NCBI RefSeq assembly: GCF_902713615.1
Contig: NC_052154.1
Location: 39,295,017 to 39,359,016 of the forward strand
DNA from: Scyliorhinus canicula
Taxonomy: Eukaryota
DNA: 64,000 bases
Reading direction: 5' to 3'
The notes below the pieces were generated by a model that ran no database searches, had not been told where the DNA came from, and was given only the letters and a program-made list of their open reading frames with translations. A program made the position numbers and the translations under genes. Positions 1 to 44,744 of this stretch are shown here, one piece after another (position 1 is the first letter of the stretch; each line of letters opens with the position of its first letter).

Positions 1-154
1 CTTGAATTTCAGCAAATTGCTCCATTCACCATTCTCTTCTTTAAACAGTGTTATGACAGGCTCTTCATTTATAGCGACACATGAACACTTTTCCTCTAAA
101 ATGCTACCTTGAAGTTCCAAATCCGCCAAATATAATTTGATACCAACAAAGGCA
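1..154 (-). CDS. TDRD12: TDRD12 exon, CS/p23 domain: SAFVGIKLYLADLELQGSILEEKCSCVAINEEPVITLFKEENGEWSNLLKFK
   Basis: tgcag acceptor, phase 2, open to the window edge; LxK...WxxL CS motif. Confidence 0.93.
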
Positions 155-3100
155 CTGCAATTAAATAATATGAAGCCTCAGATAAAGATCAAAGACAATA
201 ACTTTCTTTGTAAGTAATCGAAACTTTAGCTAGCTTTTACCTAAATACTACTCTGCAATCACCAAATTTGCATGAATGTTTTGTAAAATTTCGCAACTTC
301 ACATTCAGTATGAGCCGGTCTTCCTTCTGATGCCACTTTATTTCTGGGTGAAAGCTACAGGAAAATATAAACAATGACAAGTTAAAGTGTAAAATCAAAT
401 TCAAAACTCAAAATTTTGTTTAAATTATGTAATCATATTGCACAACTAGCTTGCAGACAGGAAGATTTAATATCAATACGGATAACCTTTTATGATCCAT
501 TGTTGATCGATTTTTTGCATCTTCAGGAACATCCACAATATCTGTGATTAGAAAATAATATAAAACATAAATCTTAAAATATATATTAATTGTGGAAGAA
601 TCCTTGGAAACTGAAAATAAATGTTTTGCTTTTGCCAATTCATTTTTCTGTTTGAATGCATTGCACCTGTCATTCAGCACTTGTATTTCCAAACAAAACA
701 CAAACCACCTTTGTTAACCTCTGTTAAGCATGTCAAAGTACTTAATGGCAGTTTCATTTATTTTCCACAAACTGATTCACAGTTAAAAGTTGAAACACAT
801 TTTACGAAATTAGTTTCTAATCAAAAAAATAATTCACTGAATGTTAAATTTGAATGTTAACCAGTGTTATTCAATTTAGCATTGAAGGGGTGCTGAACCA
901 TTTAAAATGGAGTCTTTCAGTTGAAAAACTAAACCGAGACCCCATCTACAATTCAGTTGGAAGTAAAAGATCCCACTATGAGGAGGATCAGTGTTCGGGT
1001 CAAAATTTATCCTTTAAACCAACATTGTTAATGCTGCATCTGATGAATAAATAATTTTACTGTTTATTTTATTTTAAAAACATATTCATAAAAAACATTC
1101 TTAGAATATTTTCTATTTCATAACAAGAACAAATGCTACAAATTATAGTCTACAAAGGTGAATAAATACCAGTATTTCCGTCACAGAAGGCTGCACCGTT
1201 TTGTAAGCAATATAAATTTTGAAAACTGGCCAGTGAAAACTTCAAATTGTTTGCAATTTCATATAAAGCACTCCTGTTAGATGTGCTCGCTAACAGCCTG
1301 AAAGTAAAAAAAAAAACACGGTTAAGTTCCCATGCAGTACATCAAATTGAAATCAAAAGAGATAAGAATATACTTGAATATATACTGTGATGCTACAGCA
1401 TCTGTTTTAGATCTTTTCCTGGTTTGTGGCTCCTACAGTACCTCCATGCAAAACTGTATACACATTTTACAGATACTATAATGTTACATACCTCTCAACA
1501 GTCACAGCAAGTCCACTTGATAACATTAAATTTAGACTCTGGGGTCTTCCACTGAGATGACACAAAACCTTCAGAATGTTTTCCAAAACCTTGCAAAGAA
1601 CAAATGTGGCAGGATATTATCTTGACTTCATAAGCAACTCCCGTTTGATGCTAAGTTTGAGAAGTAGCAACATTTCAAACACTTCATTGGTTATAAAGCA
1701 ATTTGGAATGTCCCAAGGACATGAGACACTATATTAAACATATTTTTCTTCCAATCTCTTTCTGTTCATCAATAAGTTATGCTGAATATTTCTTACCATA
1801 GAAGTATTCAAATACTTCACAAATTAACAATGCTGTATTGAGCGGTCCCTTTTAAGTTCCAAAAATCTCCTGGGATCCATGGGGCAATTTTGTTTCAAAT
1901 TCATAAAATGCTTTTAGTTCAAACACGATGTTGAAACAAATTTTTCATATTTTGTACTGGGCATGATTCTCCGAAAAAATTTCTAGGTGCGATAGCGAGC
2001 AGGAATTGCCACGAGCTTCCCGGTACTCAGCCCAGCGAGGTTGGCAACTAAATTCAATGCTAACTGGTCCACTTAAGGTCTCATGGACTTCTCGCCACAA
2101 ATGACAGCTTGCCAGCTGATTCGCCGGGACTGTACTCGCCAGCCCCCTGCAAACAAGGTCGAGCAGCACTTAAGCTGCAGTTGCTCAGACAACCCCAGTG
2201 AGCTCGTACCAATGGCACCCAGGAGACCAGTCCCAAGATTCGGGACGCTGACCTAGGGAGGCTCCAGGGCACGGTGCAGACGAGGAGGGATGTCCTGTTC
2301 CCCGAGGGTCCCGGAAGATGGTACGAGGTGGCGACAGCTGTCATCTCGGGGAGTATGACCAGGAGGACTGACCTCCAGTGCAGAAGGAAGATCAATGACC
2401 AACGCGCCACCCACCCCACAAAGGGAGCATCCACCCACCCAACCCACCCCCAGCCCTCTCTCCACCCCCCCTCCCCACCTTCATACCCAGTCTCCCATCA
2501 ATGTGAACCAACACGTGAGGCGAATGAATCCCTCTCCTCAGGAAAAGCTCTCCCAGGATCAGCGGGAGCAGGCCAAGGTTAGCGGTGGGGTGCCAGACAT
2601 CACCTTTGAGGAGCAGGCCCTGGAGGTGACTGGGGTGGCAGAGGACAGGGCGGTCACCAATGCGAAAGCTGGTGGATGCCACAGAGGTGAGGAACCATTG
2701 GGCCCTGCCCGAAGGACCTGTCAAACGTAAGTACTGATTGCCTTACTGACTGACCCGTTCCTCCCACTGACCACATGTTCATTCGCCCGCAGGTCCTCCA
2801 GGCGACGGAGCCAGCCCATCCGGGCGGTCCCCTCTCCTGACTCAATGGAGAACATCTCGGAGGAGAGCTCAGAGGATGCAACTGTTACAGCCGCAGCACA
2901 GCTGTCATCCCCACCCTCCACCAACGCTGATACACACACCTCAGTGGGACATGTTAGTGGTCAGGCTTCTTGAGCACAATCTGGTGATTGTGCTGTTGAT
3001 GTGCATCAGGTGGCGGCAGGAACCCCCAGGTGAGACAGCAGTCAGAGAGCTGCCGGATCCCAGGACCCAGCTGGGTCCCTGCCTGATGCTGAGCTTCTGG

Positions 3101-12100: not shown

Positions 12101-15100
12101 GCAGGGGGACGCTTTTGGATGGAAGGGGTTGTGCCCCAAGACATGCACCTCCATTCCCTGTAGCTCCTGCACTCCTCGTTCTGCGCTCTCTCGGGACAAT
12201 ACTATTTGAATGGCCTGTTGAAAAGTCAATGTTGGCTCGGCTAACAACCTTCTCTGGGTGGCCACATTGTTAATACCGCAAACCAAACCGTCGCGTAACA
12301 TTTCTGACAAGGTCTCACCATAGTCACAGTACTCCGCAATCCTGCTTAGCCTGGATAGAAAGTCGGCAAGGGATTCTCCTGGGGTCCTCTCAGTGGTATT
12401 AAACCGGTAACGTTGGACTATCGTGGATGGGGTTGGGTTAAAATGTTGCCGCACTAAGTTCACAAGTTCATCAAACGTTTTGGTGTCCGGCGCAGCTGGG
12501 TACGTAAGGCTCCTAATCACCCCAAACGTATGCGGGCCGCAGGCGGTGAGCAATATGACCACCTGGCGCTCGTTTTCGGTGATGTTGTTTGCCCGGAAAT
12601 AGTAACGCATCCATTGTGCGTACTGGTTCCAGCTTTCCAGCGCAGCATCAAAAATATCCAAATGTCCATAGAGGCATGGTGTAATAGAAAACAACTTCCA
12701 ACCTGTATCCAACAAAAATCCAGGGAGGTGGCTTCAGCAGTGTAGACAGCTATTCACTTTAACCCTCGTTGCCAGTTTTGTGAGGGCCACGAAGAATCCA
12801 GCACAAGTTTTCAGGATACAAAGAAATAACATTTATTTACAATAACAATAAACAGCAGCAGCAACTTCCCTTGCTGCTCACTCCTTTCTCTCTGCTGGTT
12901 CCAAACTGGCCAGCTCTATTTATGCAGGGAGACTGCTAATGATTTCTCCGCCCCCCTCATTGGGGAAGCTCATACTCCCATAGGATTGTGGGATTGTCAT
13001 TAGTCCCCAGCCAATGGTAAGCAGGCAGGTTATAACAGCTTCACAGACAAAAAGGGAGCCACATGAGGATAAACAAATGAATCTAACTAAAATCCTATTA
13101 AAAGACCTTTGACCCACGAGCATCGAATTTCTGATTGCAGAATGCAGTACTATTAAATAGAAATAATTCAGACCTTGGGCTTTCCCTTCAAGTAGATTGT
13201 CACAGGCAAGTTAACTAGGTCTTGGTGTGTTGCAATATTTTGAATAAATTACCAGTTTTCAATGATGGTATCAGGAGTCAGAAGCTAACCAAATGGTTTG
13301 TGGTCACTCAAAAGCTAGCCTTAAATGGTATAATTTGAAACTACCTGTAAATTATTCATACAATAGTAATTAAATTAGTATCTTCAATTTTACCTTATCC
13401 TTTGAAGATTGCTGAATTTTTGTACAAAGATGACAGATAATGTCTTGCTCTTCAATTTCTTCACAAACCCTAAGAAAGGACACATTTATGTGCATGCAAT
13501 AAAATGCTATACTATTCTCAAAACTATAACATGATGATTTTAGATTCCAAAATATAAATCATGAAATTTCTCCAGTAATTGGATTGTTGTGAAGAGAGAA
13601 CTACCAACAGATCACTGATTTCCATCCCTAGAAAGAAAGATACCAACAGCACGTGGGGAGGCCTAATATGTTTGTGTTAGCTTCTCATTACAGTAATCTA
13701 ATACTAATCCCAGTGATCTACTCTTCACATACAAACCTGGATTTCGCTTCGCTGCAAATATTTAACCAATTTTTCCTTAAAAGGTGATACATTATCTGCC
13801 TCATTCCATGCTCTACATGAAGAATTTTTTCCCAACCTCTCTCTTCATGCTTTTTGTGGCAATTTGAAATTGAATACCCTTTGCAGCAGTGCCCAGGTAA
13901 TATTTGTTCAGCCTGGAAGGCCCAATAAGGATAAAAATAGAAATTTACTCTCGGGCTCTTCAGCTGGATAGCCAGTTGATACTGGGGATAAGTTCCACGG
14001 TATAGGTTATTGATTTTCATAGATACATAGAAGATAGGAGCAGGAGGTGGCCTTTTGGCCCTTCGAGCCTGCTCTGCCATTTATCATGATCATGGCTGAT
14101 CATCCAACTCCACAGCCTAATCCTGCTTTCTCCCCATAGCCTTTGATCCCATTCGCCCCAAGTGTTATATCTAGCCGCCTCTTGAATATATTTTTAGCAT
14201 CATATTTAAAAGGACTGATAACTGAAATAGGTGAGCATCTGGTCATCCAGTAACTGATGGCCTTGGACATGGCAGTGGCCAAAGTGTCTGTTCAAATGGG
14301 TTGGTAAGCCACTTTCAGGCCATCATGGCCTGCTTATGCTGAGGTGACCCAAGTTGACCTTTAACGCTGTATCTTTCATAAGTGCTCAATTTTTGCCGAG
14401 TCCCACTTTCTATTATAGACTTTCATAATTTGTTTTTTGAGTGACTTTACCAAATATTTTCTGCAAGGCCAAATCAACTATATTTTAGGAGCTCTACTAG
14501 ATAATCACCCCGAATTTTCTGCCAAGGGTTCTGCTGTAGCCTAGCACATGGGCTATCAAGTCTCAAAAAGAATTTTTAGCAACCTCTGATGGAACTAGAA
14601 GTTCATTAACGTCCGTTGAGGACAGAATCAGGGTCGGCTGAGATTCCTGCCTACTAAGACTCACAAATGAACAGCAATACCCAGGAGTACGGGAAGCAAT
14701 TCATGCTTTTGGAACTTCAGCAATAAGTTGAAGTTTCACAGAAGGGATGAAGGTAGGTAGATTGGCCAGAAAAAATACATTTAACGTTTACAAAAACATG
14801 CATCTTAATTACAATAAGTATTGCAAGCCAAGTAAATTAATTGAATAACAATGAAAATAAAACATTTCATTTTACAACATATGCATAACTCATATTTATC
14901 CTTTTATTTCACATTAACAAAAGACTGGAAGGAGGAAAAAGGTAACTGGGACCGAGTAAGGAAGGAGAAAGATAATGGGAACAGAGATAAGGAAACAGAG
15001 ATAAGGAAAAAAGGTAAGAATGAGGAAGATTAGGTGGGATACAAGGAGGATAGATGAGGGAACAGGTTTTGTCAGGATATGCAAGTTTATAATTTACACA

Positions 15101-18100
15101 AGGAAACCTATTTTTGGACTAGTTAAAGCAAATCCAGGTGCTAAAATTCAAATTTTTTTGCAATCAGGCAGGCAAACTTTGTATTTCATGCGATGTTCCC
15201 TTCTAACCTGAACCCCAACGTTTCTACCTGCGAGAGCTTAGTGACCTTTCTTCTAGGAGTGCTATCATTATATATGGAAGATAACATTTAAATCATTCTT
15301 TTATACCTGCTGGAGGAAAGAAGTGCAGCTAAAGCTCCAATAATAGCTTCCCACACATTATTTTCAATCGGCTTTTTCAGTAAATGGCAAAGGTGCTTCA
15401 ATGCATCGGCATCAATAATAGCTGTACTGAGATCACGGTTTTCACTTAGAATCCCAAGTGCAACGCAGACGCTTTCTTGTAGTTCTGCATTGGTTACTAA
15501 AACCAGAGAGAAATCAGGGCAGTGAAAAATGGTTCCATCAATTTTGAGAATAACATTGAACAAAATTCTGAGCACTGGTGGTCAGAAATCTTAATTAATG
15601 CTGAAATTTGATATGGATTTCTCACCCTGAAGTAGGTTCACAAGCACACAAATTCCTTTTTCATTTTTGATTTCATCCAGATTTCTGCAATAATAATGAC
15701 TGAGAATTAGATTCTAAAAAAGAATTCAGAGCATTTAAATGCTTCAGAACATTAAAGATTTTTTACAGAATAGAACTATGAATACCCAGGAGTGATTTAT
15801 CAGATAACATTCTTATCGAGGATGATAGAGGATTACACAGATGATTGGGACAGTGGGATCAGTTTTAGATTGTTTTAACCAATACAGACATGATAGGTAA
15901 ACAATTATGGTTCTAGGATGTGCTCATACCATCTGTGTTTCCACTTCTTAAGCTGAACAAATGACAAAAGAAAATAACATTTAAAGTGTTTTAAAACAGC
16001 TTTTACTTGTACCGAAGACTTGGTACTTGATAGTACTGTTGATGACACCTTCCATCATTTTGCTAATGATCGAGAGTAGACAGATGGTGTGTAATTGGCA
16101 GGGTTCGATTCACCCTTTTTGTGATCATGACATGCCCGGGCAGTCTTCCCACGTTGCCAGGTAGATGCCAGTGTTGTAGCCGTACAGGAACAGCTTGGTT
16201 AAGGGCACAGCTAGTTCTGGGGCAAAAGTCTTCAGTACTACTGCCAGAATCTTGTCAGTGTCCATATCCTTGGCAGTCCCCACATCCTTGGCAGTGCCCA
16301 CATCCTTGGCAGTGTCCACATCCTTGGCAGTGTCCAGTGCCTTCAGCTGTTTCTTGATGGAGTGAATCAAATTGCTTGAAGACGGACAGCTGTAATGCTG
16401 GGAACTTCCGGATGAGGCTGAGATGGATTACCCACTGAACAATTCTGGCTGAATGCTTCAGTCTTGACTTGTGCATGTGTTGGATTGAGGATGGGATATT
16501 TGTGGAGCCACCTCTTTCAGTTATTTCCCCACCATCTTTAATGGCTGGATGTGGCAGCATTTCAGCTTAGATTTGTTCCATTGGTTGTAGGTAATTAGCT
16601 CATTCTACCGTATGCTTCTTGCACTGTTTGACATGCAAGTAGTCTTGTTTTCACCTGGCGAAGACCTCATTTTAGGAATGCCTGGTGCTATTCCTGCATG
16701 CCCTTCTGCACTTCATTGAACCTGGGTTGATCGCTGAGCTTGATAGTACTGGGAGCGAGAAGGAAATGCCAGGCCACGAGGTTACAGATTGAAGTTGTAT
16801 ACAATTCTGCTGTTACTGATGGCGCACAGCATCTCATGGATTGAACGTCTAGACCAGTTAGGTCACAAGGGAGTCTGGTGACATTTATTTTAATACAAGG
16901 AGTCTTATGAACAAGGTAGTTGAATTGAGGACACAAATTGAAACCTGGGGTATGATCATTGCTGTCACAGACATGTTTGAGAGAGGGGCAGGATTGGCAG
17001 CTCAATATTCCGGAATACAGGGTCACCTGGCAAGATAGGGAAGGACATAAAAGAGGATGGTGTGTCACAATTTTGATCAGGGAATCAATTACAGCAGTAA
17101 GGAGGGATGTCATCTTAGAAGACTCTTCAACTGAAGTCATATAGGTAGAATGTAAAAACCAAAAAAAAGCAATCACATTGCTGGGAGTGTTCTATAGGCC
17201 CCCTAATCATCCGAGAGAAATAGAAGAGCAGATATATAGGCAACTTTCAGAGAAGTGTATAAGTAATAAGGTAGTGATAGTGGAGGATTTCAACTTCCCC
17301 AACATTAACTGGGGTAGCCATAGTGTAAAAGGTTTAGAGGGAGCGAAATTCTTAAAATGCATCGAGGAGAAATAGGTCAGGTTCTAAATGAATACTTTGT
17401 GTCAGTGTTCACTTGTGAGAGGAAAAGTGTGGGTTTAGAAATCAGGAAGAAAGGCTATGATAAAATTAAAGAGATTAACATAGACAGAGAGGAGGTTCCG
17501 AATGGTCCGGCAGGCTTAAAAGTAGACAAATCTCCAGGGTCAGGTGACACTTATCCCAGGCTGTAGAGTGAGGCAAGGGAGGAAATAACAGGGGCGCTGT
17601 TTATTTTCAATTCCTTTCTGGCCAAAGGAGAGGCACCGGAGGACTGAAGGATAGTCAATGTGATACTTTATTCAAGAAGGGAGGACAGGATAAACCAGGA
17701 AACTACAGGACAGTCAGTCTAACCTCAGTGGCAGGGAAACAATTGGAAGCAATTCTGAAACACAGGATTAATTTGCATTTGGAGGGGCAGGGATTAATTG
17801 AGAATAGTCAGCATGGCTTTGTTAAGGCAAGGTCATGTCTGACCAACTTGAGTGAATTTTTCGAAGAGGTGACCTAGTATGCAGATGAGGGAAATGCATT
17901 TGGCGTAGTCTACTTGAACTTCAGCAAGGCTTTTGAACACATGGGAGACATATAGTGAAGGTAAGAGCCCATGGGATCCAAGGAAATTTGGCAAATTGGA
18001 TCCAGATGTTTGAGGGGTGTTTTTCCAAGTGGAATCCTGTGCCCAGTGGGGTCCCGCAGGTATGTGTTGGGGCTCTTGCTGTTTGTGGTTGATACAAATG

Positions 18101-24100: not shown

Positions 24101-27100
24101 CCTGTAAGATGGGTTTCTCCTCTGCAGTGCTAGCCCAGTAGCGGTGGCTATTTTTTAGTTAACACGTTTTAAATGTGCTAAGGGGACACCTGGAGATGAT
24201 GTCACCTTCTGTCTCCCTTACATGCAACAACAGGCTGCAGCTATCTCTGTAGGGCCTTCTATTGGCTCTCCAGCTTTCCGAGCCTGCATGCTGTCCTTAA
24301 CTGAACGCAAGTGCACCTCCTGTCTTTTATGATATTCTTTCACGGGACGTGGGTATCATTGGTTTGGCCAGCATTTTAATTGCCCATCCCCAATTGCCTG
24401 TACCCACGAATTATCTAATCAAGCCAAGATCACTGTTGGGGGACTGATTCTGACACAGCACAGGGTTGGGTTCCAAATTTGACCCTGACCTTGGGGTCCT
24501 GAACCAAAGCTTAGAATCCAGGCCGTTGTCCTGAAAATTACTCAAAACACTTCAAGTTTCTGTTTCTCCATGATGATTTTCTTCATATCTGAAATATCTA
24601 GTGTCCAAAATAAGGGTTTAAACAAACTGAAAAAAAACACACATTTTGGAACATTCTGGTCTACTCTCCAACAGAACATGTTGAACTGTCAAAGAATATT
24701 GAGTAGTATTACCTTACTTGCATCTTGGCCAAATGAGTCATTGCTACTATTACATCAGCTTGTTCTTTAGTAGAAAGGAACTGTAGCAATCTGCACAGGA
24801 AGCTTAAACTTGATTCTGATGCATTGTCTGCAGGATACTGCAGCACCATGTTTTTGAGTTCCTCCACTGTTGTGGTTCTTAATGAAGATGCTTTAAAATA
24901 AAAGATAAACCATTTCAAACATGTTTTGACTGGGTTATTTTGTGAGATTTTATTGGAGCAAGGCGATGGATGTACATTATTTCACAAAATAACTTTTTCA
25001 GAATTAATAGAATTACCACAATAATCACACAGAAAAATCTCATCCATCTCATTATCTGAAATCCCCTCCCCTGCCACGCAGCCCTCCTGCAAAAAGAAAG
25101 TGTCGCAATCCAATGGAATTCACTTGAGGCTAATGGACAAGGAGAAACTATAATGTAAGAGGCTAATGGAATGTTGGCCTTTATCTCAAGGGGTCTGGCA
25201 TATAAAAAAGGGGAAAGTGATGATGCTGTTAGACATTTAGAGAACTGAGCTCAGTTCGGGATATTACACCCCAGGAAGGATATGTTGGTCTGAGGAGTGC
25301 AGTACAGATTAACCAGAATGAAGCTGGGCTAAAACAGATAATTTATCAGGCTGAACTGCATTGATCGGGCTTGCACTGGCCTTGAGAACGCAAGATTAAG
25401 TGGTGATCCATCTGGTTGTTTAAGCTGATTTAAAGAAAGACTCTGTCTGGAGAATCCAAAACAAGGGAGTGCAAACTCAGTTAAAAATATGCTGTGGTCA
25501 GAAAGGGCGAACTTCACACAAGGATCATGGAAAGCTCTCCCACCCAAAAAAACTGTGGTAGCTAAGTAGCATGAACATTTCAAACCGACGATTGACTGAT
25601 TGTTGATAGGCAAGGTAATTAAGGGTTACAGAATCAGGTGACAAGGTAGAATTAAGATTCAGATCAGCTATGAGCCAACTGAATCGCAGCACAGATTCAA
25701 GTGGCAAAATGGCCTATTACTGTTCCTAATTTCTAAACTGTGTTGCACTGACAATGCCACAGGACATATTGGAAAATCTACAAACAATTTTGCACTGATT
25801 TAAAAAAAGATTCTTTGGACAGACTCGAAGGTTATTCAGAGTTCAAAAATAAATATGTAATTCTTGCATTTTTAAAGCACTTTTAATGAAGTAAAACATA
25901 ACAAGGGGCTTCATAGGAGGACTATCAGCAGAAATCAATGCAAAGCCACGTAGAGATGATAGTACAGATGCCTTTGGTCAAAGGTAGGTTTTAAAAAGCA
26001 TCTTAAAAGTGTTAAGAGAGGTTTAAGGAGAGAATTCCAGAGCTTAGGATCAAAATAGTTGAAGGCACAGTTACCAATCGTGGAGCATGAAACTTGTAGA
26101 TTAAATTTTAAAAAATCAAGGGGTTGGCAAACTGTAGTCAATTTTGGTCAGCAAGTGATGAGAGAACAGAGTATTTAAGATTTCGAACAGCTTAAATTTA
26201 CATAAAGGGGATAGGAGATCAGGAGAACATTAGAATAGTGAAGTCTGCAAATAACAAAGGTTTGAATGATGGTTTCAGCTCCAGATGAGCGGGGACAAAG
26301 GCAGTGTTGATTTTCTCAACAAATGCCTGTGGAACATCCTCTTAAAATTGTAAGTTTTCAGCTTGATATCACCATACTTCACGCTGATACCATGTAATAA
26401 TTTACACATTAGGCAACTGAATCTTACACAGATTGCACTTGGCCAACAGTTGGACATTTTCAGCTTAAAAAACTGCCAGAGCAGTTTACTAACTTTATAA
26501 TCAGGTAAGCATCACTTACAATTTAGATTTTGATCTCCTAAAAGGGCACAAACAGAAGAACCGAGGCATGAAATGGAGCTGGTTTGACCATTTATTACTG
26601 CTTCTTCGGGAAACAATTGGTTTAAAATTGCAGGTGGCCCTTCACCTTGTCCTTTAGATACAATACATTCTGATAGTTTTAAAGAGCCAGCATTAGAGGG
26701 ATCTTGCACAACGACATGGTAGCACACAACAGCAGCTACAAAGAAAAATACAAGGGAAATATTTCAATTTAATACATTAATGACATTTCTCTGTTATGAC
26801 TGAAGTATACTTCCCAATGCAGACTTCCAAATTTTGTTCCCATTAAAAAAAGTGTTAAAAAAACTCAATTTATTGTGGGCACGACACGGTGGCACAATGG
26901 TTAGCACTGCTGCCTCACAGCGCCAGGCACCCGGGTTTGATTCTGGTTCCGGGTTACTGTCCGTGTGGAGTCTGCACTTTCTCCCTGTGTCAGTGTGAAT
27001 TTCCTCCGGGTGCTCCAGTTTCCTCCCACTGTCCAAAGATGTGCAGGTTAGGTGGATTGGCCATGCTAAATTGCCTCTTGGTATCCAAATGGTTAGGTGG

Positions 27101-30100
27101 AGATACTGGGTTAAAAGGATAGGATGGGGTCTGATCCGAGGGAGGATGCTCTTTCAGAGGAACGGTGCAGACTTGATGGGCTGAATGGCCTCCTTCTGCA
27201 CTATTGGTATTCTATGAATTCTGGGAAACTCATCCGCCCAAATTTAATTTGACATATTTTAGATGTTATCAATTTGGTTGAATTGGACATTCTGAATTCT
27301 CCCTCAGTGTACCTGAACAGGCGCCTGAGTGTGGCGACTGGGGATTTACACAGTAACTTCATTGCAGTGTTAATGGAAACCTACTTGTGACATTAATAAA
27401 GATTATTATTATATCAACTCACTTAGATCATTTCTATTTTGTTCAATAACTTTAACTTGGAGCTCCTTGTCCTGAAAAGTATTGAATACCAACTCTTTAA
27501 TCTCTGGGTTCCAGTTTTCTTCCACAGGTTCCACACCAAATAATGAACAGCAGATGGCCTGCAACACCAAGATAATCACATAGGGCTATATTAATCCACA
27601 ATCATGATCATATGTAAAGCTAGATGGTCACAGTTAAGTAATGTAATGGCTTCAGGATTTGTATTTCTAATGGGGGAAAAAGTTAAAAGAACTTATTGTA
27701 CAGGACAATTAGGTGCATTAGGGAATAAACTTCCTGGGCTACAGCAACTAAGTGACGGAGTGGGAATGACTGGAGTGCTCCACAGCGAGCTGGCATAGAA
27801 GTCATGGGGTTGAATAGCCTCCTTCTGTGCCAGACGTGACTCTGTGACTATAAAACTTGACTATACGGCATGCATTTCTTTTAGACCGAACAAGCATTGA
27901 ACAAAATATGAACAAAAGGGAGATGTTTCAGCACACATGTAGAACCGGATGTATTTTCAGATGATAACGTCAAGGGGCAGGATGTAAATGAGAAATGGTG
28001 GGGGCCAAAGATAGATCCGTGAGGGACCCCAAAAGGTAATGTGCAAGTGGAAAGAGAAGGCAATGCAGACAATTCTCTGGCTACACCTGGCTACATTGGA
28101 ATAAAAACCCCTGCACCATTCAATCATTCATCATGTTTTAAAGAATCATATTGAGGAAGGAGCTCCAACAATCACTTCTCAGTCAAAACTTCCGTATGCA
28201 AACAAGTCAGGTACAGGATAGTAGGCAAATGGAGGAAGAAACTAAAAAGTAACAATACAGTTAGTGCAGAGATGAGCTCTGATTCTTCTGCACCTGCTAA
28301 GCGTTTATGTCATTGTTTATCTAAGCACTAAAAGCATTGCATCCTTTAACTGAACAAATAGGTCTAGGTTGTAAGGAAAAAGGTAAGGCACAGACTGGCA
28401 AGAGAGAAAATAAATTACAGTGGTGTCATACATAAAATGGGTGGCAAAGGTAGCAAGTAAATATTTAAATTTATCTAATAACTTTAGATCATATAAAGAA
28501 TGCGTGAAATGATTAAATACAGAAACTTTAAATAAAGATAAGGTTAGATAGGGATGATAATGTAGGTGGTACGCCGCAAAACAGAGTACCTGGAGAGCGT
28601 TGCAATCCTGGCCTATCACATCCAGAGTAAGTAGCTGCATCTTGAAGAACATCAGCTCAGATTTGTTGAGTTGGAGTCTGGGATGCTGACATTGGGGAGG
28701 GCATCAGGGAGAAGTTACCTGGACACTTTATATTCAGGAAGTGACCATAGAATCATAGAAATAACAGTGCAGAAGGAGGCCATTCGGCCCATTGAGTCTG
28801 CACCGGCTCTTGGAAAGAGCACCCTACCTAAGCCCGTACCTCCACCCTATCCCCGTAACCCCATCTAACCATTTTTGGACACTAAGGGCAATTTAGCATG
28901 GCCAATCCACCTAACCTGCACATCTTTGGATTGTGGGAGGAAACCGGAGCACCCGGAGGAAACCCACGCAAACACGGGAAGAACGTGCAGATTCCGCATA
29001 GACAGGTGACCCAAGCCCGGAATCGAACGTGGGACCCTGGAGCTGTGAAGCAATTGTGCTAACCACTGTGCTGCCCCCACATCCCTTAGGTAATGTACAG
29101 GTCTGGTTTATGGTCACGAACAGGAGAGCGAGACTTTCAGTCAGGCAGATATGGGTGCCCCAGATGCAGGGCTGGAAGATCCTTGACCGCTGCCCTAATC
29201 CAACAGGTATGAGACTTTTACTGCCTGAAGCCTGAATGGATAAGGGGAAAGTTTTCAGAGGGCATGAACAACTGACCACAGCATCATGGTATAGGAAACT
29301 ATTCAAGTAGGGAAGTGAATAGGAATATGGTAGCAGCGTGGGACAATATAGTCAGGAGTTAGATACCGTGCTAGTGTAGCCATCTGGGATGGCCACTTAC
29401 AACCATGGACAGAGAGACTCGCAAAGCCTAGCGGGTAAAATGGACAAAGCCAGATTAAGGCAGGCTCAGAGCCGGAAATGTATATTTGCAAGCAAGGAGT
29501 CCAGTTGGTATCGAAACTCCGACCAATTAGCATTTTGATGGGCTGATTAGCATTTGATGGCCCATCTTCACCAAGACAAAGGACTGGTACTCGAGCGACC
29601 GGTACAGTCCCAGACATTTTGGCGCCACTCCCTGTTCAAGGGAAACGTAAACAACGGGATCAGTGACTGCTTGGGACACGTCCAGCCATCCAGGCATCCA
29701 CCCATTTATTGGTTAGGAATCAAACAAAGTGATCAAGGATCACCCAATTAGTGGGGTCCAAACTGAAGGACTGCCCGAAAGAGCACGAAAACCCCCAAGT
29801 ATAAGAAGAGAGTCCGCCATATGTTCAACCCCTTTTGGACCTGGCGCCTGGCAACGTCCATCTCCAATCGCAGCACCACCAGAAGCAAGTCCAAGTTCAA
29901 CGCTCGCTACCAAACGGATGAGCCTAGCTGAGCAGCAGTTACTTCTCCAGACTCGATAGATCCAGAATCGAACAGCGGCCACTGTTCCTCTGACCTAAAC
30001 CGGGTGCCTGAAGTTAAGTACAGGTTGTCTTAGTCGATAGGTGTAGTTAACTAGTAGTGTATGTTGCATGATCCATTGTGTGTTTAAATAAAGTACCCCT

Positions 30101-33100
30101 GACCTTGAACTAACTAACTGGTGTTTGGCTCTTTGATTGATAGCCGGTTGAACCTTGTGGTGGTATCATTTGATACCTGGCGACTCTGAGCATCAGAACA
30201 TAGATATCAAAGAAAGGAGGGCAAACTCACTGATTGCCATAATTAGAGCAGAGCAACAGAGGAAACGAAAGCACAACATTCTGCAATTGTGACCATGAGC
30301 TCCAAAGGTTGTGCTACCTGCTCAACATCACTTTGCAGCTAGAGAAGAGCCCTTGAGTGGAACAATTGTTACGGTTCATGTGTAGACCAATGGCATAGGT
30401 AAAACTAGCAATCAGATTCTGCTGAGAAGGTTTGAGGAACGAGGGCCCAAATTAATAAACAGAACCTCAAAAGGTAAGATTACTAAACAAGGGGAAATTT
30501 AGAAATCTAAAGAGAAAAGTCAAATGTTTAGGGCAGTGGATCAATGTAGGTAAAAACAAAAAGTGCAACAGAAGGGAGAGAGTTTAATAGCAAGAGTGCA
30601 TCAGTGAAAGGATTAAATCAGGAATAAATGGTAAAACATGAAAATTAAACACTATCTGAATGCACAAAGCATTTGCACTAAGAGATTTGAACAAATATCA
30701 CAAACAGATATAAATGGGAAGGATGTAATAGCCATTATGATCGCATAGTCATAAGGCTGTAAATTAATATTTCAGGGTATTTAATGCTTCAAAAACACAG
30801 ACAGAATAGAAAAGGAGGGTAGCAACACTCATAATTACAAATGACACAAGTTCAGCAAGTGAGGAATGATCTTGGCGAGGGAAAGCAGGGAGTAGAGTCA
30901 ATATTGATGGAGAGAAGAATGAATAATGGATAAAAATACTGGTGAAGTGCAGTGGTTTACAAACCCACCCCTCTCCCCGTCCCCAACATGAGCTATATAG
31001 TTGAACAGAGTCTTATTAAGTAAGAGAAGCTTGTAAACAAAGGTATTGCAATAATTGTGGAGGACTTTAAACTTCACAGAGGGTGGAATTTTTCATTTTT
31101 GTGACTAAGTACCATGGTGGGCAGGTTCCACTAAACATTTCGTACTGCATGTGGCAAGAGATCGCACCTGATTTTGCTTTCGGAAGTGCATTAATTATGC
31201 ATAGGTGCATTTTGCTCTGAATCACATGGCAGATTGAGAACTAATTGTCCAATCCCGCTACCACCTAATGAACTTGTTGGTATAGGCGCTATATTTAGAC
31301 GCCACCCTCACCCTCTTCAGGCCAGCTTTCAGGAAAAGTTTCAAAAAGGCTGCGTCAAAGAGAGCTGTTCCAAAGTTCAACAGTGACTCATTGGAGGTGC
31401 TCATCATTGATGTGTGGCAACACTGGGATATCCTCTATCCCCGGGCTGGCTCCAGGAAGCCCAACAACCTCACCTCTCAGGCCTGGGAGGCCATTGCAAA
31501 GGCGATCAGCACATTGGGGACTCAGCCATGAAACGCCATCCAATGTAGGAAGAGAATGAATGATTCATCTGCTCTGCCAGCGCAAGTCAACCTTGAGGTC
31601 ATTCCAATCTCTCACTCTCATAACAGCATCATGCACTGAAAGGGTTACACTGCTCGGGGATCTCACTCAATATTAGCAGGAGGCATAACACCACTGATTG
31701 TCTCACGGGCATTTCAATATCCCCAACATCTCATCTATCATGCTGCACAAACTCCATCGTCATCCCTTACGGAGCAAGGCTCAACCTCTCATCCCACTTT
31801 TCCCAGCACATTCCCTCCGTTTGCCTTCATCAAGGCCAAGCTTGCGCACGACAAGGAGAGATCCCAAATCATTGAGGAGCTCCTGTGAGTAAGTGAAATC
31901 GGCTTCTTCCTGCAAGCCAATGGGGGTGAACCCTCCATGAGTTGATCACATCTCGTCATTCTCAGCGATTCTCTCTTACAAGGTGCCCAGGTGGCTCTTC
32001 CAGGGTGCCCAGGTGGCACCCCATCTGGAGAACAATTACCTGGGAGCCTTCCCCTGGTAGACACCCCAAATGTGGTTATGCCTGGTCCCCATTTGTGGCC
32101 ACAAATCCTTCTCAAGCTTTTCCCTTGCCTGAGGTGTGGTCAACCTCAAGTTAAATCACCACCAGTCAGCTCTCTCAAAGTGGGGAGCAGTCTATGGTCT
32201 TCTGGGACAATGGAGACTTTAAATTTAAAAGTACAATTTCCTTTCTCTAACTTTATGTTTAGTTGCAGTGTTTCTAAAAAAATTCTTCCCATTATTAAAT
32301 GCAGTTTAATTAACAATTAAAACTGACCTGAAAAGGAAGCTGAAGGACATCTTTCACTAAAGGTTGAATGTTGTTCAATGAAACACAGCTGCATGTCCCA
32401 AAATCCACAAAGAACACCGTACAATTCCTTTTGGTGTAGAGAACTGACAAGACCTCCACTCTACGCCACCTGAAATTTCAAGGAAAATTTGTCATTAGTT
32501 TTCCAAATGAAGAAAAAGTCCAAGACACTGCCAATCCATAACCAACAGCCAAAACTTTCATTCTTCAGTATCTGTGTCATATCAACATAATATTCTTTCA
32601 GAAAACAATCTAGTTTTGAGGTCCATATCAACATTTAGGCCAGTTGGTGGACTTAAATGAGTTGGCCTGTCCACGACTGGCAGCAACATGGCAATTTTCT
32701 GACCAAAGCTGCAAAGAACTCAACTGAGAAGGAGCTGTACAGCCACAAAAACCTGGCAGATGAAACCTTACAAGTCATGGGAAATCTAACAACACAAGCA
32801 GAGGTTTGGAATTCCAATCAGGGTGGGGGAGGGGAAGGAAGTTCAGGGAAATGGGGATTCAAAATTACCTTCTGGGTAAAAGAAAATTGTAAAACCTCCT
32901 TTGCTGGGCCTCAAGCAGCTGCAGTGTTCAGCAGATTTGATTTGGAGGGGAAGCTAACAATTCTCACTTGTATTTTTTTGTTTGTTATGAAAAAGAGGAT
33001 GTTTGGGTTTTGAAATCCAATCAGTCTACATGTCACATATGGTTTTCTGTAGTCAGATGACCTCTATCATGAGGCAGCCTCTGTAAGCAGACATCTTAAC

Positions 33101-36100: not shown

Positions 36101-39100
36101 GCCACATTGGTTAATGCTAACTTTATCATGTTTACTCTAACGATTGAAGAATAAAACTGATGCTCGGCCCAATCACTTGCTTGGCAAGACACACACAAGC
36201 AAACTGCAGCGTAAGGACATCCGAATAGTTACCTCTTTTTTGTTTCACAAAACGCCAAGCACAAGTCACCAACAGCTGGCACATAACTGCCTGAAATGGA
36301 AGTTTCCTTTCCCAGGGCTCTTTGGTTAATTTCATTCTCTAAAGCGCAAAGCCTAATGGAACAGAAAAATAATCTTGATCTTACTATTTTCAGCCATTTG
36401 TCAATTTCATTTTGAATTTTGCACCTATGGGGCAAGATGGAAAACCATTTTATAAATCCTTAATTTAAAAAAAAATATTTTTAAGGTTTTGCAGAATTTT
36501 TCATAATAAAATAGTAGTAACAATAATAACAAAACAATTCTTAACTGTACCAGTACAATATTATTTACTTACGCTTCCCGTGTTTCCACCAACTGCACGT
36601 AGAATTGCTTTGGACTATGAAATTCAGAAATTATGACTGAATAGTAGTTTCCATCATTCTTGAGAATGGCATATTCTAACTTCTTGTCGTAAAGTGGCCT
36701 ATAAAACAAATCATAACACTTGCACAAAGTTTGATTTCACAGATTACTATTAGAAATAGTCAAAATGGAAGAAAATTCTTCAAGCAGCACATTCTTATTA
36801 ATTGTGGTACATAGGTAAACATGGTAACTACTCTTTTCATCAATGCCAAGCAAACCAGTCATGAGATTATGTTTTGTGTTAGTATTGGTTTCAGGAGGAA
36901 CATCGAACAGGATATTTGGCACTGTATAATGTCCCTCTGAATTACTGAGGCAGACTTTGGAGTTTTTATTTTGATTATGAGCACAAATTCCTGATATCTT
37001 GCTAATTTGAATATACACCTCTAATCTTAAAAGCGCAAATGCACTACCAACTGAGCTAATCTCACAGATAGTGCAGTATGGTCATGGTATGATATGTGTC
37101 TTTCTAAATGATCCTCCTTTGCAGTGTAGTAGAGATATTTTCCCCAAATGTTAGGAATTTAAAAAGAATAAAAAGCAGCAATGAGAAAGAACCGCACTTT
37201 ATTAGAAAAAAACTCACCTTTGTGCTCAGGCAATCCATAACATCCAAAGAAATTTGCAAGCAACCTGGAAAGGGAAAGACCATCCAACTTCCGCTCGATA
37301 GAACTTAGAAACAGAATGGGATCTGAACTCTCATCTAACGACCTTGGCTTCATATCCTTGACTTAATTGAGCTAGTTCCACACATCTGTCACCCTTTGAG
37401 GAGTGCTTCCTAACTTTTCTTCTGAACAGTTTGGCTTCTGATTTTAAAGTTACATTCACTTGGCTAGAGAAAGTTCTTTATATAGCCCATCAATGCCTTT
37501 CAAATTCCTAAAATAAACTTTGACCAAATCACCCATTAATCTAATAATAATCTTTATTATTGTAACACTGCAATGAAGTTACTGTGAAAAGCCCCAGTCA
37601 CCATACCCCGGCGCCTGTTCGGGTACACTAAATTGGAGAATTCAGAATGTCCAATTCACCTAGCAAGCACATCTTTCAGACTTGTGAAGGAAACCAGAGC
37701 ATCCGGAGGAAACCCACGCAGACACGGAGAGAAAGTGCAGACTCCACACAGACAGTTACCCAAGCGGGAATCAGCTCACCTCTGATCCTGACAGCAGTCT
37801 TGCAATTTTACGCTTGGAACAGCTTTAATTGCTCTTAAGTTAGACACACACCCCATCCTGGATAAAAAGTCCCACCTTGGAGAGCTGCCAGCCAAGTGGA
37901 TGATGACAGATGTGCAGATCCCGTCGGAAACACTGCACCCAAGGAAACCCTCCCTAGACTGCCAACCGACCAGACACCAAAAATAGAGGATCATAGAATT
38001 TACAGTGAAGAAGGAGGCAATTCTGCACCGGCCCTTGGAAAGAACACTCTACTTAACCCACCCTATTCCCATAACCCCACCTAACCTTTTGGACACCAAG
38101 GGGCAATTTAGCATGGTCAATCCACCTAACCTGCACATCTTTGGACTGTGGGAGGAAACTGGAGCACCCGGAGGAAACCCACGCAGACACGGGAGAAAGT
38201 GCAAACTCCACACAGACAGTCACCCAAGGACAGAATTGATTCCGGGACCCTGGAGCTGTGAGGCAACAGTGTTAACCACTGTGCCACCCCAGGATACTAT
38301 GGTCAACCTCACCACAAAAGTTCTGGCAGCATAAAAACAGTCAGAGGGAGACACAATTCAGGGTAAATGACTGACTCCTCTCCCCCCACCTCCAAGGGAG
38401 TGCTCGACAAACTCCTGTTCTCAACAGGTTAAAACACAACTTGCCTGGGCCCCAAGAATAAGCGCAGCCTAAAGAAAAAGATTAGATCGGACTGTGGGGA
38501 CGGTCCTCGAACATAGTGAGGACAGATCTAACCTCATCACCCACACCCTCCACCCTGCTCGGCTCATCCTGCCCCCAGGATACAAAAGGATAAAGAAACT
38601 GTGCACAAATTCAGCTTAACATAATGCAAACTTATTCATTTAGGATAATTGATTGCCACCCCCAAAAACTTCACCTTCCTGCAAGCAGATAAAGTAACAT
38701 TAACAGACATCATGATTATCAGGGCGTAAAGTCCAGGGTCAATTGAGGAGCGAGGCCATCACCAGGATAAAAGATCACTCCATTGACGCACAAAGAAAGT
38801 AGACATCAAGGGAAAACAGGAGAGCATCCTTCAGGATCTTCCAGGGATTTCAGCGATCGGAATACGAGATTCAGTACTTCCAGGCTGCAAACTCGACCGG
38901 GCCCAGGCAATCAACAACTTAGGCTCCCGCAGGTTGGGGGAAAAACGGCCTGGCGGGCTCAGGTAGTTTCCACTCCTCTTGGCCGACACCAGGAACAAGA
39001 CCACATAGAGCCAGAGGTTGGAAGGCCACCCCAATCCCAGGCTTTGAAGATGGGATTAAATGTGCTCCAGATCGAGATTCCCAAAACATGGCAGCCAGTT

Positions 39101-44698: not shown

Positions 44699-44744
<46 letters not shown>

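What the first reader, a model, noticed from the sequence alone, without database searches (positions are those of the whole stretch)
487..36698. Shark TDRD12 carries a 508-codon, 12-exon insert (extra extended Tudor plus armadillo repeats) before its CS domain
Seen in sequence: 12 GT-AG exons totalling 1524 nt lie between the exon ending the post-helicase Tudor (40739) and the first CS exon (354). Their phases chain without a stop. Established, from recall: mammalian TDRD12 is described as Tudor, helicase, Tudor, CS with only a modest linker here, and is required for secondary piRNA biogenesis together with EXD1 and PIWI. Inference: this lineage has a longer, possibly ancestral architecture with an extra eTudor and an ARM scaffold, i.e. 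an additional protein-interaction module in a piRNA factor that I do not recall being described.
Basis: partly seen in the sequence, partly recalled or inferred. Interest (0 to 1): 0.8.

Follow-up and report, generated by a model that had tools for sequence, protein, structure and literature searches.

The report
Extra Tudor and armadillo module in TDRD12
In sharks, rays and chimaeras the germline piRNA factor TDRD12 carries a third extended Tudor domain and an armadillo-repeat block before its CS domain; a coelacanth relic suggests this is an old jawed-vertebrate feature that ray-finned fishes and tetrapods lost.

Summary
Twelve GT-AG exons on the minus strand (36698 to 487) total 1524 nt, chain in phase without a stop, and join the post-helicase Tudor exon (ends 40739) to the first CS exon (starts 354). 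Their spliced translation is an exact substring of two database proteins of this same genome (1716 and 1756 aa). The chimaera TDRD12 locus has the same 12 exons with the same phases, and shark-chimaera dN/dS over the block is 0.33, against 0.31 for the neighbouring Tudor2 region.

Exons 1-5 encode a true extended Tudor (best solved match a TDRD1 eTudor, E 2e-19) with a degenerate aromatic cage. Exons 5-11 encode an armadillo solenoid: four canonical repeats plus caps. Exon 12 is a disordered linker.

About 20 cartilaginous fishes already have annotated TDRD12 models with this block. Coelacanth TDRD12 keeps the third Tudor plus a 34-residue relic of ARM exon 10. Paddlefish, zebrafish, tetrapods and insects lack both. 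The module therefore most likely predates the cartilaginous/bony split and was later lost, rather than being a shark insert.

I found no paper describing it. Its function is inferred only: an extra protein-docking platform next to the CS domain. It is a new variant of a known family, of moderate interest.

The parts
40739..40911 (-). Upstream flanking exon (173 nt, P0025 residues 1046-1103): tail of the post-helicase eTudor2 region. Its donor joins to insert exon 1.
   Evidence: Exact mapping of P0025. GT donor and AG acceptor. 67% identity to the chimaera protein.
36573..36698 (-). Insert exon 1 (126 nt, residues ~1104-1145): N-terminal SN-like part of eTudor3.
   Evidence: Weak Pfam TUDOR hit to profile positions 3-26. 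Falls inside the match to the TDRD1 eTudor 5M9N. Exact in P0025.
36233..36352 (-). Insert exon 2 (120 nt, residues ~1145-1185): connecting helix and start of the Tudor core.
   Evidence: 63% identity to chimaera.
32328..32469 (-). Insert exon 3 (142 nt, residues ~1185-1232): Tudor beta-barrel core.
   Evidence: Pfam PF00567 E 7e-9, profile positions 68-113. The coelacanth protein stays collinear up to the end of this exon.
27423..27558 (-). Insert exon 4 (136 nt, residues 1233-1278): C-terminal SN-like part of eTudor3.
   Evidence: Aligned to TDRD1 eTudor residues 130-188. Exact in P0025.
26520..26735 (-). Insert exon 5 (216 nt, residues ~1278-1350): last strands and helix of eTudor3, a short linker, and the first capping helices of the ARM block.
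   Evidence: 61% identity to chimaera over 67 aa fixed the long donor at 26520. Secondary structure comes from the ARM model.
24713..24890 (-). Insert exon 6 (178 nt, residues ~1350-1409): ARM cap and repeat 1.
15626..15684 (-). Insert exon 7 (59 nt, residues ~1409-1429): start of ARM repeat 2.
   Evidence: The chimaera exon is the same size, 59 nt.
15307..15496 (-). Insert exon 8 (190 nt, residues ~1429-1492): ARM repeats 2-3, the best conserved part (pLDDT about 90).
   Evidence: Pfam Arm 22.9 bits against a cut-off of 20.6. Designed ARM proteins match at E 4e-16. 69% identity to chimaera TDRD12 in an exhaustive search. Many invariant columns in the alignment.
13394..13469 (-). Insert exon 9 (76 nt, residues ~1492-1517): ARM repeat 4, first helices.
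1492..1589 (-). Insert exon 10 (98 nt, residues 1518-1550): ARM repeat 4, third helix. Coelacanth TDRD12 keeps a relic of this exon.
   Evidence: Coelacanth P0039:1153-1186 scores 20.3 bits against the exon-10 profile; the best of 2000 shuffles scores 10.7. In six cartilaginous-fish proteins the best ungapped window is always exon 10.
1170..1297 (-). Insert exon 11 (128 nt, residues ~1550-1593): C-terminal capping helices of the ARM block.
487..541 (-). Insert exon 12 (55 nt, residues ~1593-1611): disordered linker into the CS domain.
   Evidence: pLDDT below 50. Lowest conservation of the block, dN/dS 0.7 over 18 codons.
241..354 (-). First CS-domain exon (114 nt, residues 1611-1648). The CS domain continues in 156..1, which is cut by the window end.
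   Evidence: Exact mapping. 48% identity to the coelacanth region that Pfam calls CS, PF04969.

Best explanation
The 12 exons are coding exons of the TDRD12 orthologue of a shark. They give the protein the architecture eTudor1, DEAD-like helicase, eTudor2, eTudor3, armadillo solenoid, CS.

The module is shared by all cartilaginous fishes sampled. It most likely existed in the last common ancestor of jawed vertebrates. Coelacanth retains eTudor3 plus one ARM exon, while ray-finned fishes and tetrapods replaced the module with a short disordered linker.

The proposed mechanism is inferred, not shown. The module is an additional protein-docking platform placed directly before the CS domain. Published work reports that the CS domain mediates nuage localisation in silkworm cells and binds a TDRD1-like partner in flies. 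eTudor3 has a degenerate aromatic cage, so it probably binds partners independently of methyl-arginine, as other non-canonical eTudors do. The ARM groove is strongly conserved but lacks the importin-type Trp/Asn ladder, so it probably binds a specific, still unknown, peptide or domain rather than a basic NLS-like peptide.
For: Gene structure: the exon chain is an exact match to this genome's database proteins, and all sites are GT-AG. The chimaera locus has the same 12 exons and phases.

Selection: shark-chimaera dN/dS is 0.33 for the block, 0.31 for the Tudor2 region and 0.13 for the CS exon.

Domains: Pfam TUDOR reports three stretches in the full protein. eTudor3 matches TDRD1 eTudor 5M9N at E 2.4e-19 over 162 residues, and also TDRKH and SND1. 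The ARM block is supported by Pfam, by solved sequences, by a model with pLDDT 71 and pTM 0.72, and by Foldseek probability 1.00 with TM up to 0.74 by target against designed ARM proteins, plus beta-catenin, importin-alpha and U-box ARM domains.

Distribution: the ARM block is present in about 20 annotated cartilaginous-fish TDRD12 models and in no bony vertebrate among the 120 listed. Coelacanth has the third Tudor and the exon-10 relic. The 28-kb paddlefish locus has no trace of either. Tetrapod linkers do not hit the insert profile.

Published architectures of fly, silkworm, mouse and zebrafish TDRD12 homologues have no third Tudor and no ARM (PMC4712191, PMC12526068, PMC5485951).
Against: No transcript data could be consulted, so inclusion of every exon in mature mRNA rests on conservation and on gene predictions.

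The ancestral inference for the ARM block rests on one 34-residue coelacanth segment from a predicted protein, and the coelacanth locus could not be fetched.

No cyclostome or non-insect invertebrate TDRD12 was seen.

The word-seeded searches miss distant relatives; even the coelacanth protein was missed.

No binding partner is known. The three-domain model was of low confidence (pLDDT 55, pTM 0.39), so nothing can be said about contacts between eTudor3, ARM and CS.
Confidence: 0.8

Rival explanations
1. The ARM block is a gain in the stem of cartilaginous fishes. Only eTudor3 is ancestral to jawed vertebrates, and the coelacanth 34-residue segment resembles exon 10 by chance or convergence.
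For: All ARM-bearing TDRD12 proteins found are from cartilaginous fishes. Insect homologues lack ARM (PMC12526068, PMC4712191), so one gain is as parsimonious as one gain plus losses if the coelacanth segment is ignored. The relic is short, and its whole-protein E-value against the exon-10 profile is only 4e-4 in a set of about 100 proteins.
Against: The segment lies exactly between Tudor exon 3 and the CS exon. It begins and ends at the exon-10 boundaries, and the phases fit. None of 2000 shuffles reaches half its margin: 20.3 against 10.7 bits. In six proteins it matches exon 10 and no other ARM repeat, scoring 43-62 against 20 or less for the next best window.
Confidence: 0.12
2. The exons are real but form an alternative cassette or a nested transcript, and the main TDRD12 mRNA skips them. 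Skipping all 12 exons keeps the reading frame.
For: 1524 is a multiple of 3, and the 40739 donor and 354 acceptor have compatible phases. Some ray and shark models carry shorter versions of the block. The coelacanth model joins exon 3 to exon 10 to CS, which shows that such in-frame skips are possible.
Against: Purifying selection on the block equals that on the flanking Tudor2 region. Exon number and phases have been conserved since the chimaera/shark split. No start codon or promoter evidence points to a separate gene. Both isoforms on record for this genome include the whole block.
Confidence: 0.06
3. The chain is an artefact of gene prediction: pseudo-exons picked to keep a frame open.
For: All supporting proteins are computational predictions.
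Against: 55-85% protein identity across about 20 species. dN/dS is 0.33. There are independent domain hits from Pfam, solved sequences and fold search. Intron positions are conserved in a second genome.
Confidence: 0.02

Closest known systems
TDRD12 (ECAT8) of mouse and zebrafish, BmTdrd12 of silkworm, BoYb/SoYb of Drosophila
   Same: It is the orthologous gene. The N-terminal Tudor, DEAD-like helicase core, post-helicase eTudor and C-terminal CS domain are all present and collinear, at 42-50% identity to tetrapod and coelacanth proteins outside the block. In chimaera the neighbouring gene is an amino-acid permease.
   Different: About 500 extra residues (eTudor3 and an ARM solenoid) lie between eTudor2 and CS. 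Tetrapods and paddlefish have a 50-110 aa low-complexity linker there. Published architectures list no third Tudor and no ARM (PMC4712191, PMC5485951, PMC12526068).
Extended Tudor domains of TDRD1, TDRKH and SND1 (for example PDB 5M9N, 6PI7, 3OMC)
   Same: The full eTudor span matches, with Tudor core plus SN-like flanks: E 2.4e-19 to TDRD1 and 4e-16 to TDRKH. eTudor3 is closer to these than to TDRD12's own Tudor1 and Tudor2, which reach about 24% identity.
   Different: At the cage positions read off the TDRD1 alignment, eTudor3 has C, R, F, F and Thr where TDRD1 has F, Y, Y, Y and Asn. The residue after the invariant Trp varies among cartilaginous fishes. Canonical methyl-arginine reading is therefore doubtful.
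Canonical armadillo-repeat proteins (importin-alpha, beta-catenin, plant U-box ARM domains, SPAG6, designed ARM proteins)
   Same: The same three-helix repeat solenoid. Pfam Arm scores above its cut-off. Foldseek gives probability 1.00, TM by target up to 0.74 and rmsd about 4 A over about 250 residues.
   Different: It is a short array: four canonical repeats plus caps, by my grouping of the helices. It is embedded in a helicase/Tudor protein. No particular ARM family stands out as donor. The nearest non-TDRD12 hits are generic multi-ARM/HEAT proteins at 35% identity or less. The Asn of the peptide-binding ladder aligns with Ile in the best conserved repeat.

Membership tests
TDRD12 orthologue group | Collinear architecture: N-terminal Tudor, DEAD-box-like helicase core, post-helicase Tudor | tested here: met
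   On P0025, which maps exactly onto the window from residue 642, Pfam finds TUDOR (three stretches), DEAD and Helicase_C. The profile search returns named TDRD12 proteins of vertebrates at E = 0.
TDRD12 orthologue group | C-terminal CS domain | tested here: inconclusive
   Pfam CS did not reach E 0.01 on the shark protein itself. The region is 48% identical to the coelacanth segment that Pfam does call CS at 27.3 bits. The precomputed list gives PF04969 for the sawshark orthologue. The model shows a beta-sandwich-like run of strands.
TDRD12 orthologue group | Conserved genomic neighbourhood | tested here: inconclusive
   In chimaera an amino-acid permease gene lies directly downstream on the opposite strand. 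This fits my recollection of SLC7A9 next to mammalian TDRD12. The window itself ends inside the gene, so its own neighbourhood could not be checked.
Extended Tudor (eTudor) domain | Tudor barrel flanked by SN-like strands and helix, about 180 residues | tested here: met
   The match to TDRD1 eTudor 5M9N covers query residues 12-173 and chain residues 30-188 at E 2.4e-19. TDRKH and SND1 eTudors also match. Pfam TUDOR covers positions 4-121 of 121.
Extended Tudor (eTudor) domain | Intact aromatic cage (four aromatic residues plus Asn) for symmetric dimethyl-arginine | tested here: not met
   Read from the alignment, the positions are C, R, F, F and Thr, against F, Y, Y, Y and Asn in TDRD1. The assignment of cage positions rests on established SND1/TDRD1 structural work as I recall it.
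Armadillo-repeat superfamily | Tandem repeats of about 42 residues and three helices forming a superhelix | tested here: met
   PF00514 scores 25.4 bits against a cut-off of 20.6 on P0025 and 22.9 bits on exon 8 alone. Designed ARM proteins match at E 4e-16. The AlphaFold model aligns to 5-6-repeat ARM structures.
Armadillo-repeat superfamily | Importin-alpha-type Trp/Asn ladder on helix 3 for binding basic peptides | tested here: not met
   In the alignment to an engineered consensus ARM protein, the ladder Asn aligns with Ile. The conserved helix 3 reads Q-E-S-x-C-x-A-L-G, invariant in 13 species. Which positions form the ladder is from my recollection.
ARMC5-type ARM domain (PF24768) | Score above the Pfam gathering threshold | tested here: not met
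   29.9-34.9 bits against a cut-off of 79.9. This is a generic ARM resemblance only.

The most novel reading that the evidence does not exclude
The eTudor3-ARM module was part of TDRD12 in the first jawed vertebrates. It supplied in cis a contact that other animals make in trans. In flies the CS domain of BoYb/SoYb is bound by an eTudor of the TDRD1-like protein Vreteno (PMC12526068), and eTudor3 is most similar to TDRD1 eTudors. On this reading the fusion is a 'Rosetta stone' for a TDRD12-CS to TDRD1-eTudor interface, and the ARM groove holds a further nuage partner. Loss of the module in tetrapods and ray-finned fishes would then mark a rewiring of the PIWI-EXD1-TDRD12 complex.
Probability: 0.1. 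Interest if true: 0.6.

Novelty: new variant of a known kind. Interest (0 to 1): 0.4.

Why it matters
TDRD12 is essential for secondary piRNA biogenesis and fertility, yet the role of its C-terminal half is poorly understood. A natural, strongly conserved version with two extra interaction modules beside the CS domain offers a handle on what that region binds. The coelacanth relic shows that the compact mammalian form is a reduced form. Cartilaginous fishes could therefore be used to find partners that act in trans elsewhere. The practical limits are that the sequences are already public as automatic annotations and that the function is still only inferred.

Tried and rejected
1. My first exon chain used a short exon 5 (26735-26646) and gave 1398 nt. 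I rejected it after the chimaera protein aligned through to 26527.

2. I tested whether tetrapod or paddlefish linkers hide remnants of the block. A profile of the insert hit only their Tudor1 and Tudor2, and the linkers are low-complexity. A BLAST hint in turtle was not reproduced.

3. Six-frame BLAST and a profile search of the paddlefish locus L001 for Tudor3 or ARM exons found nothing.

4. The coelacanth locus could not be fetched; two look-ups were not on record.

5. ESM Atlas look-alikes for the ARM block and for the C-terminal half scored 0.63-0.78, which is chance level, and returned only generic ARM clusters.

6. The three-domain model (eTudor3-ARM-CS) had pLDDT 55 and pTM 0.39. It was not used for any claim about domain packing or for fold search.

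7. I looked for a donor ARM gene. The other 18 hits of the exhaustive search are not TDRD12. The seven I scanned with Pfam are multi-ARM/HEAT proteins without Tudor, helicase or CS, and the two others I scanned are Ig-repeat proteins. No donor was identified.

8. Rfam found nothing in the window.

9. Literature searches for TDRD12 with armadillo, shark, coelacanth or lamprey gave no relevant description. The 2013 PNAS paper on mouse TDRD12 is not held.


Full report
**Observation**

The gene lies on the minus strand. Working from stop-free blocks and splice signals, I rebuilt a chain of 12 exons between the exon ending at 40739 and the CS exon starting at 354.

My first chain used a short exon 5 and totalled 1398 nt. 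tBLASTn with the chimaera protein P0001 aligned 67 residues through 26727-26527, so exon 5 is 26735-26520.

The spliced translation has no stop. It is an exact substring of two database proteins that the tools flag as this window's own products: P0024 (1716 aa) and P0025 (1756 aa). P0025 maps residue for residue onto 22 exons of the window from residue 642, and a 23rd exon is cut by the window end. All 14 exons checked have a pyrimidine-rich AG acceptor and a GT donor. Introns range from 129 to 11,804 nt.

**Are the exons real coding sequence?**

An exhaustive phmmer search of 1.84 billion representatives with the 62-residue exon 8 returned one TDRD12-like protein: Callorhinchus milii TDRD12 (P0001, 1735 aa, 69% identity).

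I fetched its locus (L002) and mapped the protein exactly. The same block is built from 12 exons of 114, 108, 142, 136, 210, 184, 59, 193, 76, 98, 131 and 55 nt. The shark sizes are 126, 120, 142, 136, 216, 178, 59, 190, 76, 98, 128 and 55 nt. Every phase is identical, although the block spans 5.9 kb in chimaera and 36 kb in the shark.

Nei-Gojobori dN/dS between the two species is:

| Region | dN/dS |
|---|---|
| Whole block (499 codons) | 0.33 |
| eTudor3 exons | 0.30 |
| ARM exons | 0.34 |
| Adjacent Tudor2 region | 0.31 |
| First CS exon | 0.13 |

The block is therefore under the same purifying selection as the rest of the protein. No transcript data could be consulted, so inclusion in mRNA is inferred from this evidence and from gene models.

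**What the block encodes**

*Extended Tudor (residues 1104 to about 1310 of P0025, exons 1-5).*
- Pfam TUDOR hits exon 3 at E 7e-9 and exon 1 weakly. It reports three Tudor stretches in the full protein, the best at 1119-1240.
- Against solved structures, the segment matches the TDRD1 eTudor 5M9N over 162 residues at E 2.4e-19. TDRKH, SND1, Drosophila Tudor and Qin eTudors follow.
- It is closer to these than to TDRD12's own Tudor1 and Tudor2, which reach about 24% identity. It is therefore not a recent tandem copy.
- At the positions where the aligned TDRD1 domain has F, Y, Y, Y and Asn, eTudor3 has C, R, F, F and Thr. The identification of these as the methyl-arginine cage comes from established SND1/TDRD1 structural work as I recall it. 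I therefore call the cage degenerate.

*Armadillo solenoid (residues about 1330-1590, exons 5-11).*
- Pfam Arm is above its cut-off. The ARMC5-type model scores far below its cut-off.
- Exon 8 alone hits designed armadillo proteins at E 4e-16, and also SPAG6 and importin-alpha.
- An AlphaFold model built from 13 cartilaginous-fish sequences has pLDDT 71 and pTM 0.72, with pLDDT around 90 over exons 7-8. By my grouping of its helices it shows four canonical three-helix repeats with capping helix pairs, followed by a disordered tail corresponding to exon 12.
- Foldseek gives probability 1.00. TM by target reaches 0.74 against designed ARM proteins, and U-box ARM domains, gudu, beta-catenin and importin-alpha also match.
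- The most conserved helix 3 reads Q-E-S-x-C-x-A-L-G and is invariant in 13 species. In the alignment to a consensus ARM protein, the ladder Asn aligns with Ile. An importin-like basic-peptide site is therefore unlikely.

A combined model of eTudor3, ARM and CS was of low confidence and says nothing about domain packing.

**Distribution**

Three searches of the 5.8-billion-protein collection gave a consistent picture.
- The ARM block is present in annotated 'putative ATP-dependent RNA helicase TDRD12' models of about 20 cartilaginous fishes. These include chimaera, lamniform, orectolobiform and carcharhiniform sharks, sawshark, skates, sawfish, electric ray and stingrays, at 1430-1810 aa.
- Among them, the great white shark protein is closest to the window's (86% identity).
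- None of the bony vertebrates among the 120 best hits has the block. Coelacanth is 1319 aa, paddlefish 1387 aa, and tetrapods about 1220-1340 aa.
- BLAST and profile searches of those roughly 100 proteins confirm this.
- Their Tudor2-to-CS linkers are 50-110 residues of low-complexity sequence.
- The compact paddlefish locus L001 has no trace of Tudor3 or ARM exons.
- Zebrafish Tdrd12 is published with two Tudor domains, a DEAD box and an ACD/CS-like domain (PMC5485951).
- Silkworm and fly homologues are published as helicase flanked by Tudor domains plus CS (PMC4712191, PMC12526068).

**The coelacanth**

Pfam finds three Tudor stretches in coelacanth TDRD12 (P0039), the third at 1041-1155, directly before CS at 1189-1261. 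This third Tudor is collinear with shark eTudor3 exons 1-3 and 39% identical to it (E 5e-29).

A global alignment shows that the 34 residues between this Tudor and the CS domain (P0039:1153-1186) align to shark exon 10, window 1589-1492. They start and end at the exon boundaries. The phases would allow exon 3 to exon 10 to CS splicing.

Three results support the match:
- Against a profile of exon 10 from 12 cartilaginous fishes, the segment scores 20.3 bits. The best of 2000 composition-preserving shuffles scores 10.7.
- Among about 100 bony-vertebrate proteins, it is the only hit.
- In six cartilaginous-fish proteins the best ungapped window is always exon 10, scoring 43-62 against 20 or less for the runner-up. 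This is exon-specific homology, not generic ARM similarity.

I conclude that eTudor3 certainly, and the ARM block very probably, predate the cartilaginous/bony split. Coelacanth keeps a reduced version, or its gene model skips exons. Ray-finned fishes and tetrapods lost the module. Insects lack it, so I do not claim it is ancestral to animals. Cyclostomes could not be examined.

**Mechanism**

What is shown: the module is a conserved eTudor plus ARM solenoid inserted immediately before the CS domain.

What is published for relatives:
- In silkworm cells the second Tudor binds the PIWI protein Siwi, the CS domain is needed for nuage localisation, and the helicase core binds EXD1 (PMC4712191).
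- In flies the CS domain of BoYb/SoYb binds the MYND and eTudor1 of the TDRD1-like Vreteno, and non-canonical eTudors use unusual surfaces (PMC12526068).

My inference is that the module adds one or two docking surfaces next to the CS domain. eTudor3 would act as a methyl-arginine-independent binder. The ARM groove would bind a specific, unknown peptide or domain. A speculative extension is that eTudor3, being TDRD1-like, makes in cis the CS contact that is made in trans elsewhere.

**Novelty and score**

The sequences are already public as automatic annotations, including Pfam ARM hits. I found no paper that describes an ARM block or a third Tudor in TDRD12.

This is a new architectural variant of a well-known family with a clear evolutionary story. 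It is of moderate interest to piRNA specialists and is not a new kind of system. I score interest at 0.4.

Noticed in passing
window 18925-22757, + strand (inside the intron between 24713 and 15684): A non-LTR retrotransposon lies antisense to TDRD12. Its first ORF has a GDSL-type esterase domain. Next come an apurinic-type endonuclease and a reverse transcriptase, and the reverse transcriptase is split over two ORFs (19860-21800 and 21816-22754). The region has a strong positive GC skew (0.25-0.37).
   Followed up: partly
window, for example 51561-51893, 61588-61902, 57624-57879, 56446-56728, 28814-29072: A SINE-like interspersed repeat of about 200-330 bp occurs at least 14 times in both orientations, at 67-94% identity. 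All copies lie outside the mapped TDRD12 exons. It gives recurrent pseudo-ORFs in six-frame translation. Rfam finds no RNA family in the window.
   Followed up: partly
window 62155-62283, - strand: The two proteins on record for this genome differ by this 129-nt exon, which encodes 43 residues at the start of the C-terminal helicase domain, and by a 3-residue VSV indel near residue 272. The 1716-aa form lacks the exon, so part of the helicase core may be alternatively spliced.
   Followed up: no
proteins P0034, P0037, P0038 (stingray and devil ray TDRD12): These ray models carry a shortened ARM block. They match only residues about 63-146 and 172-329 of the 329-residue query, at 40-56% identity. 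This is either a real partial loss in myliobatiform rays or incomplete gene models.
   Followed up: no
L002:29667-30036, - strand: In chimaera an amino-acid permease gene lies tail to tail just downstream of TDRD12, which suggests that synteny with the mammalian TDRD12 neighbourhood is conserved.
   Followed up: no
window 44600-44810: A (CA)n microsatellite followed by a C-rich run lies in the intron downstream of the exon 45368-45158.
   Followed up: no
L001:25422-27799 (paddlefish TDRD12): Paddlefish has its own lineage-specific coding exons in the Tudor2-to-CS linker (protein residues about 1066-1245). They are serine- and acid-rich and unrelated to the shark block, and one exon appears duplicated (42% identity between 25422-25697 and 26202-26390).
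   Followed up: no
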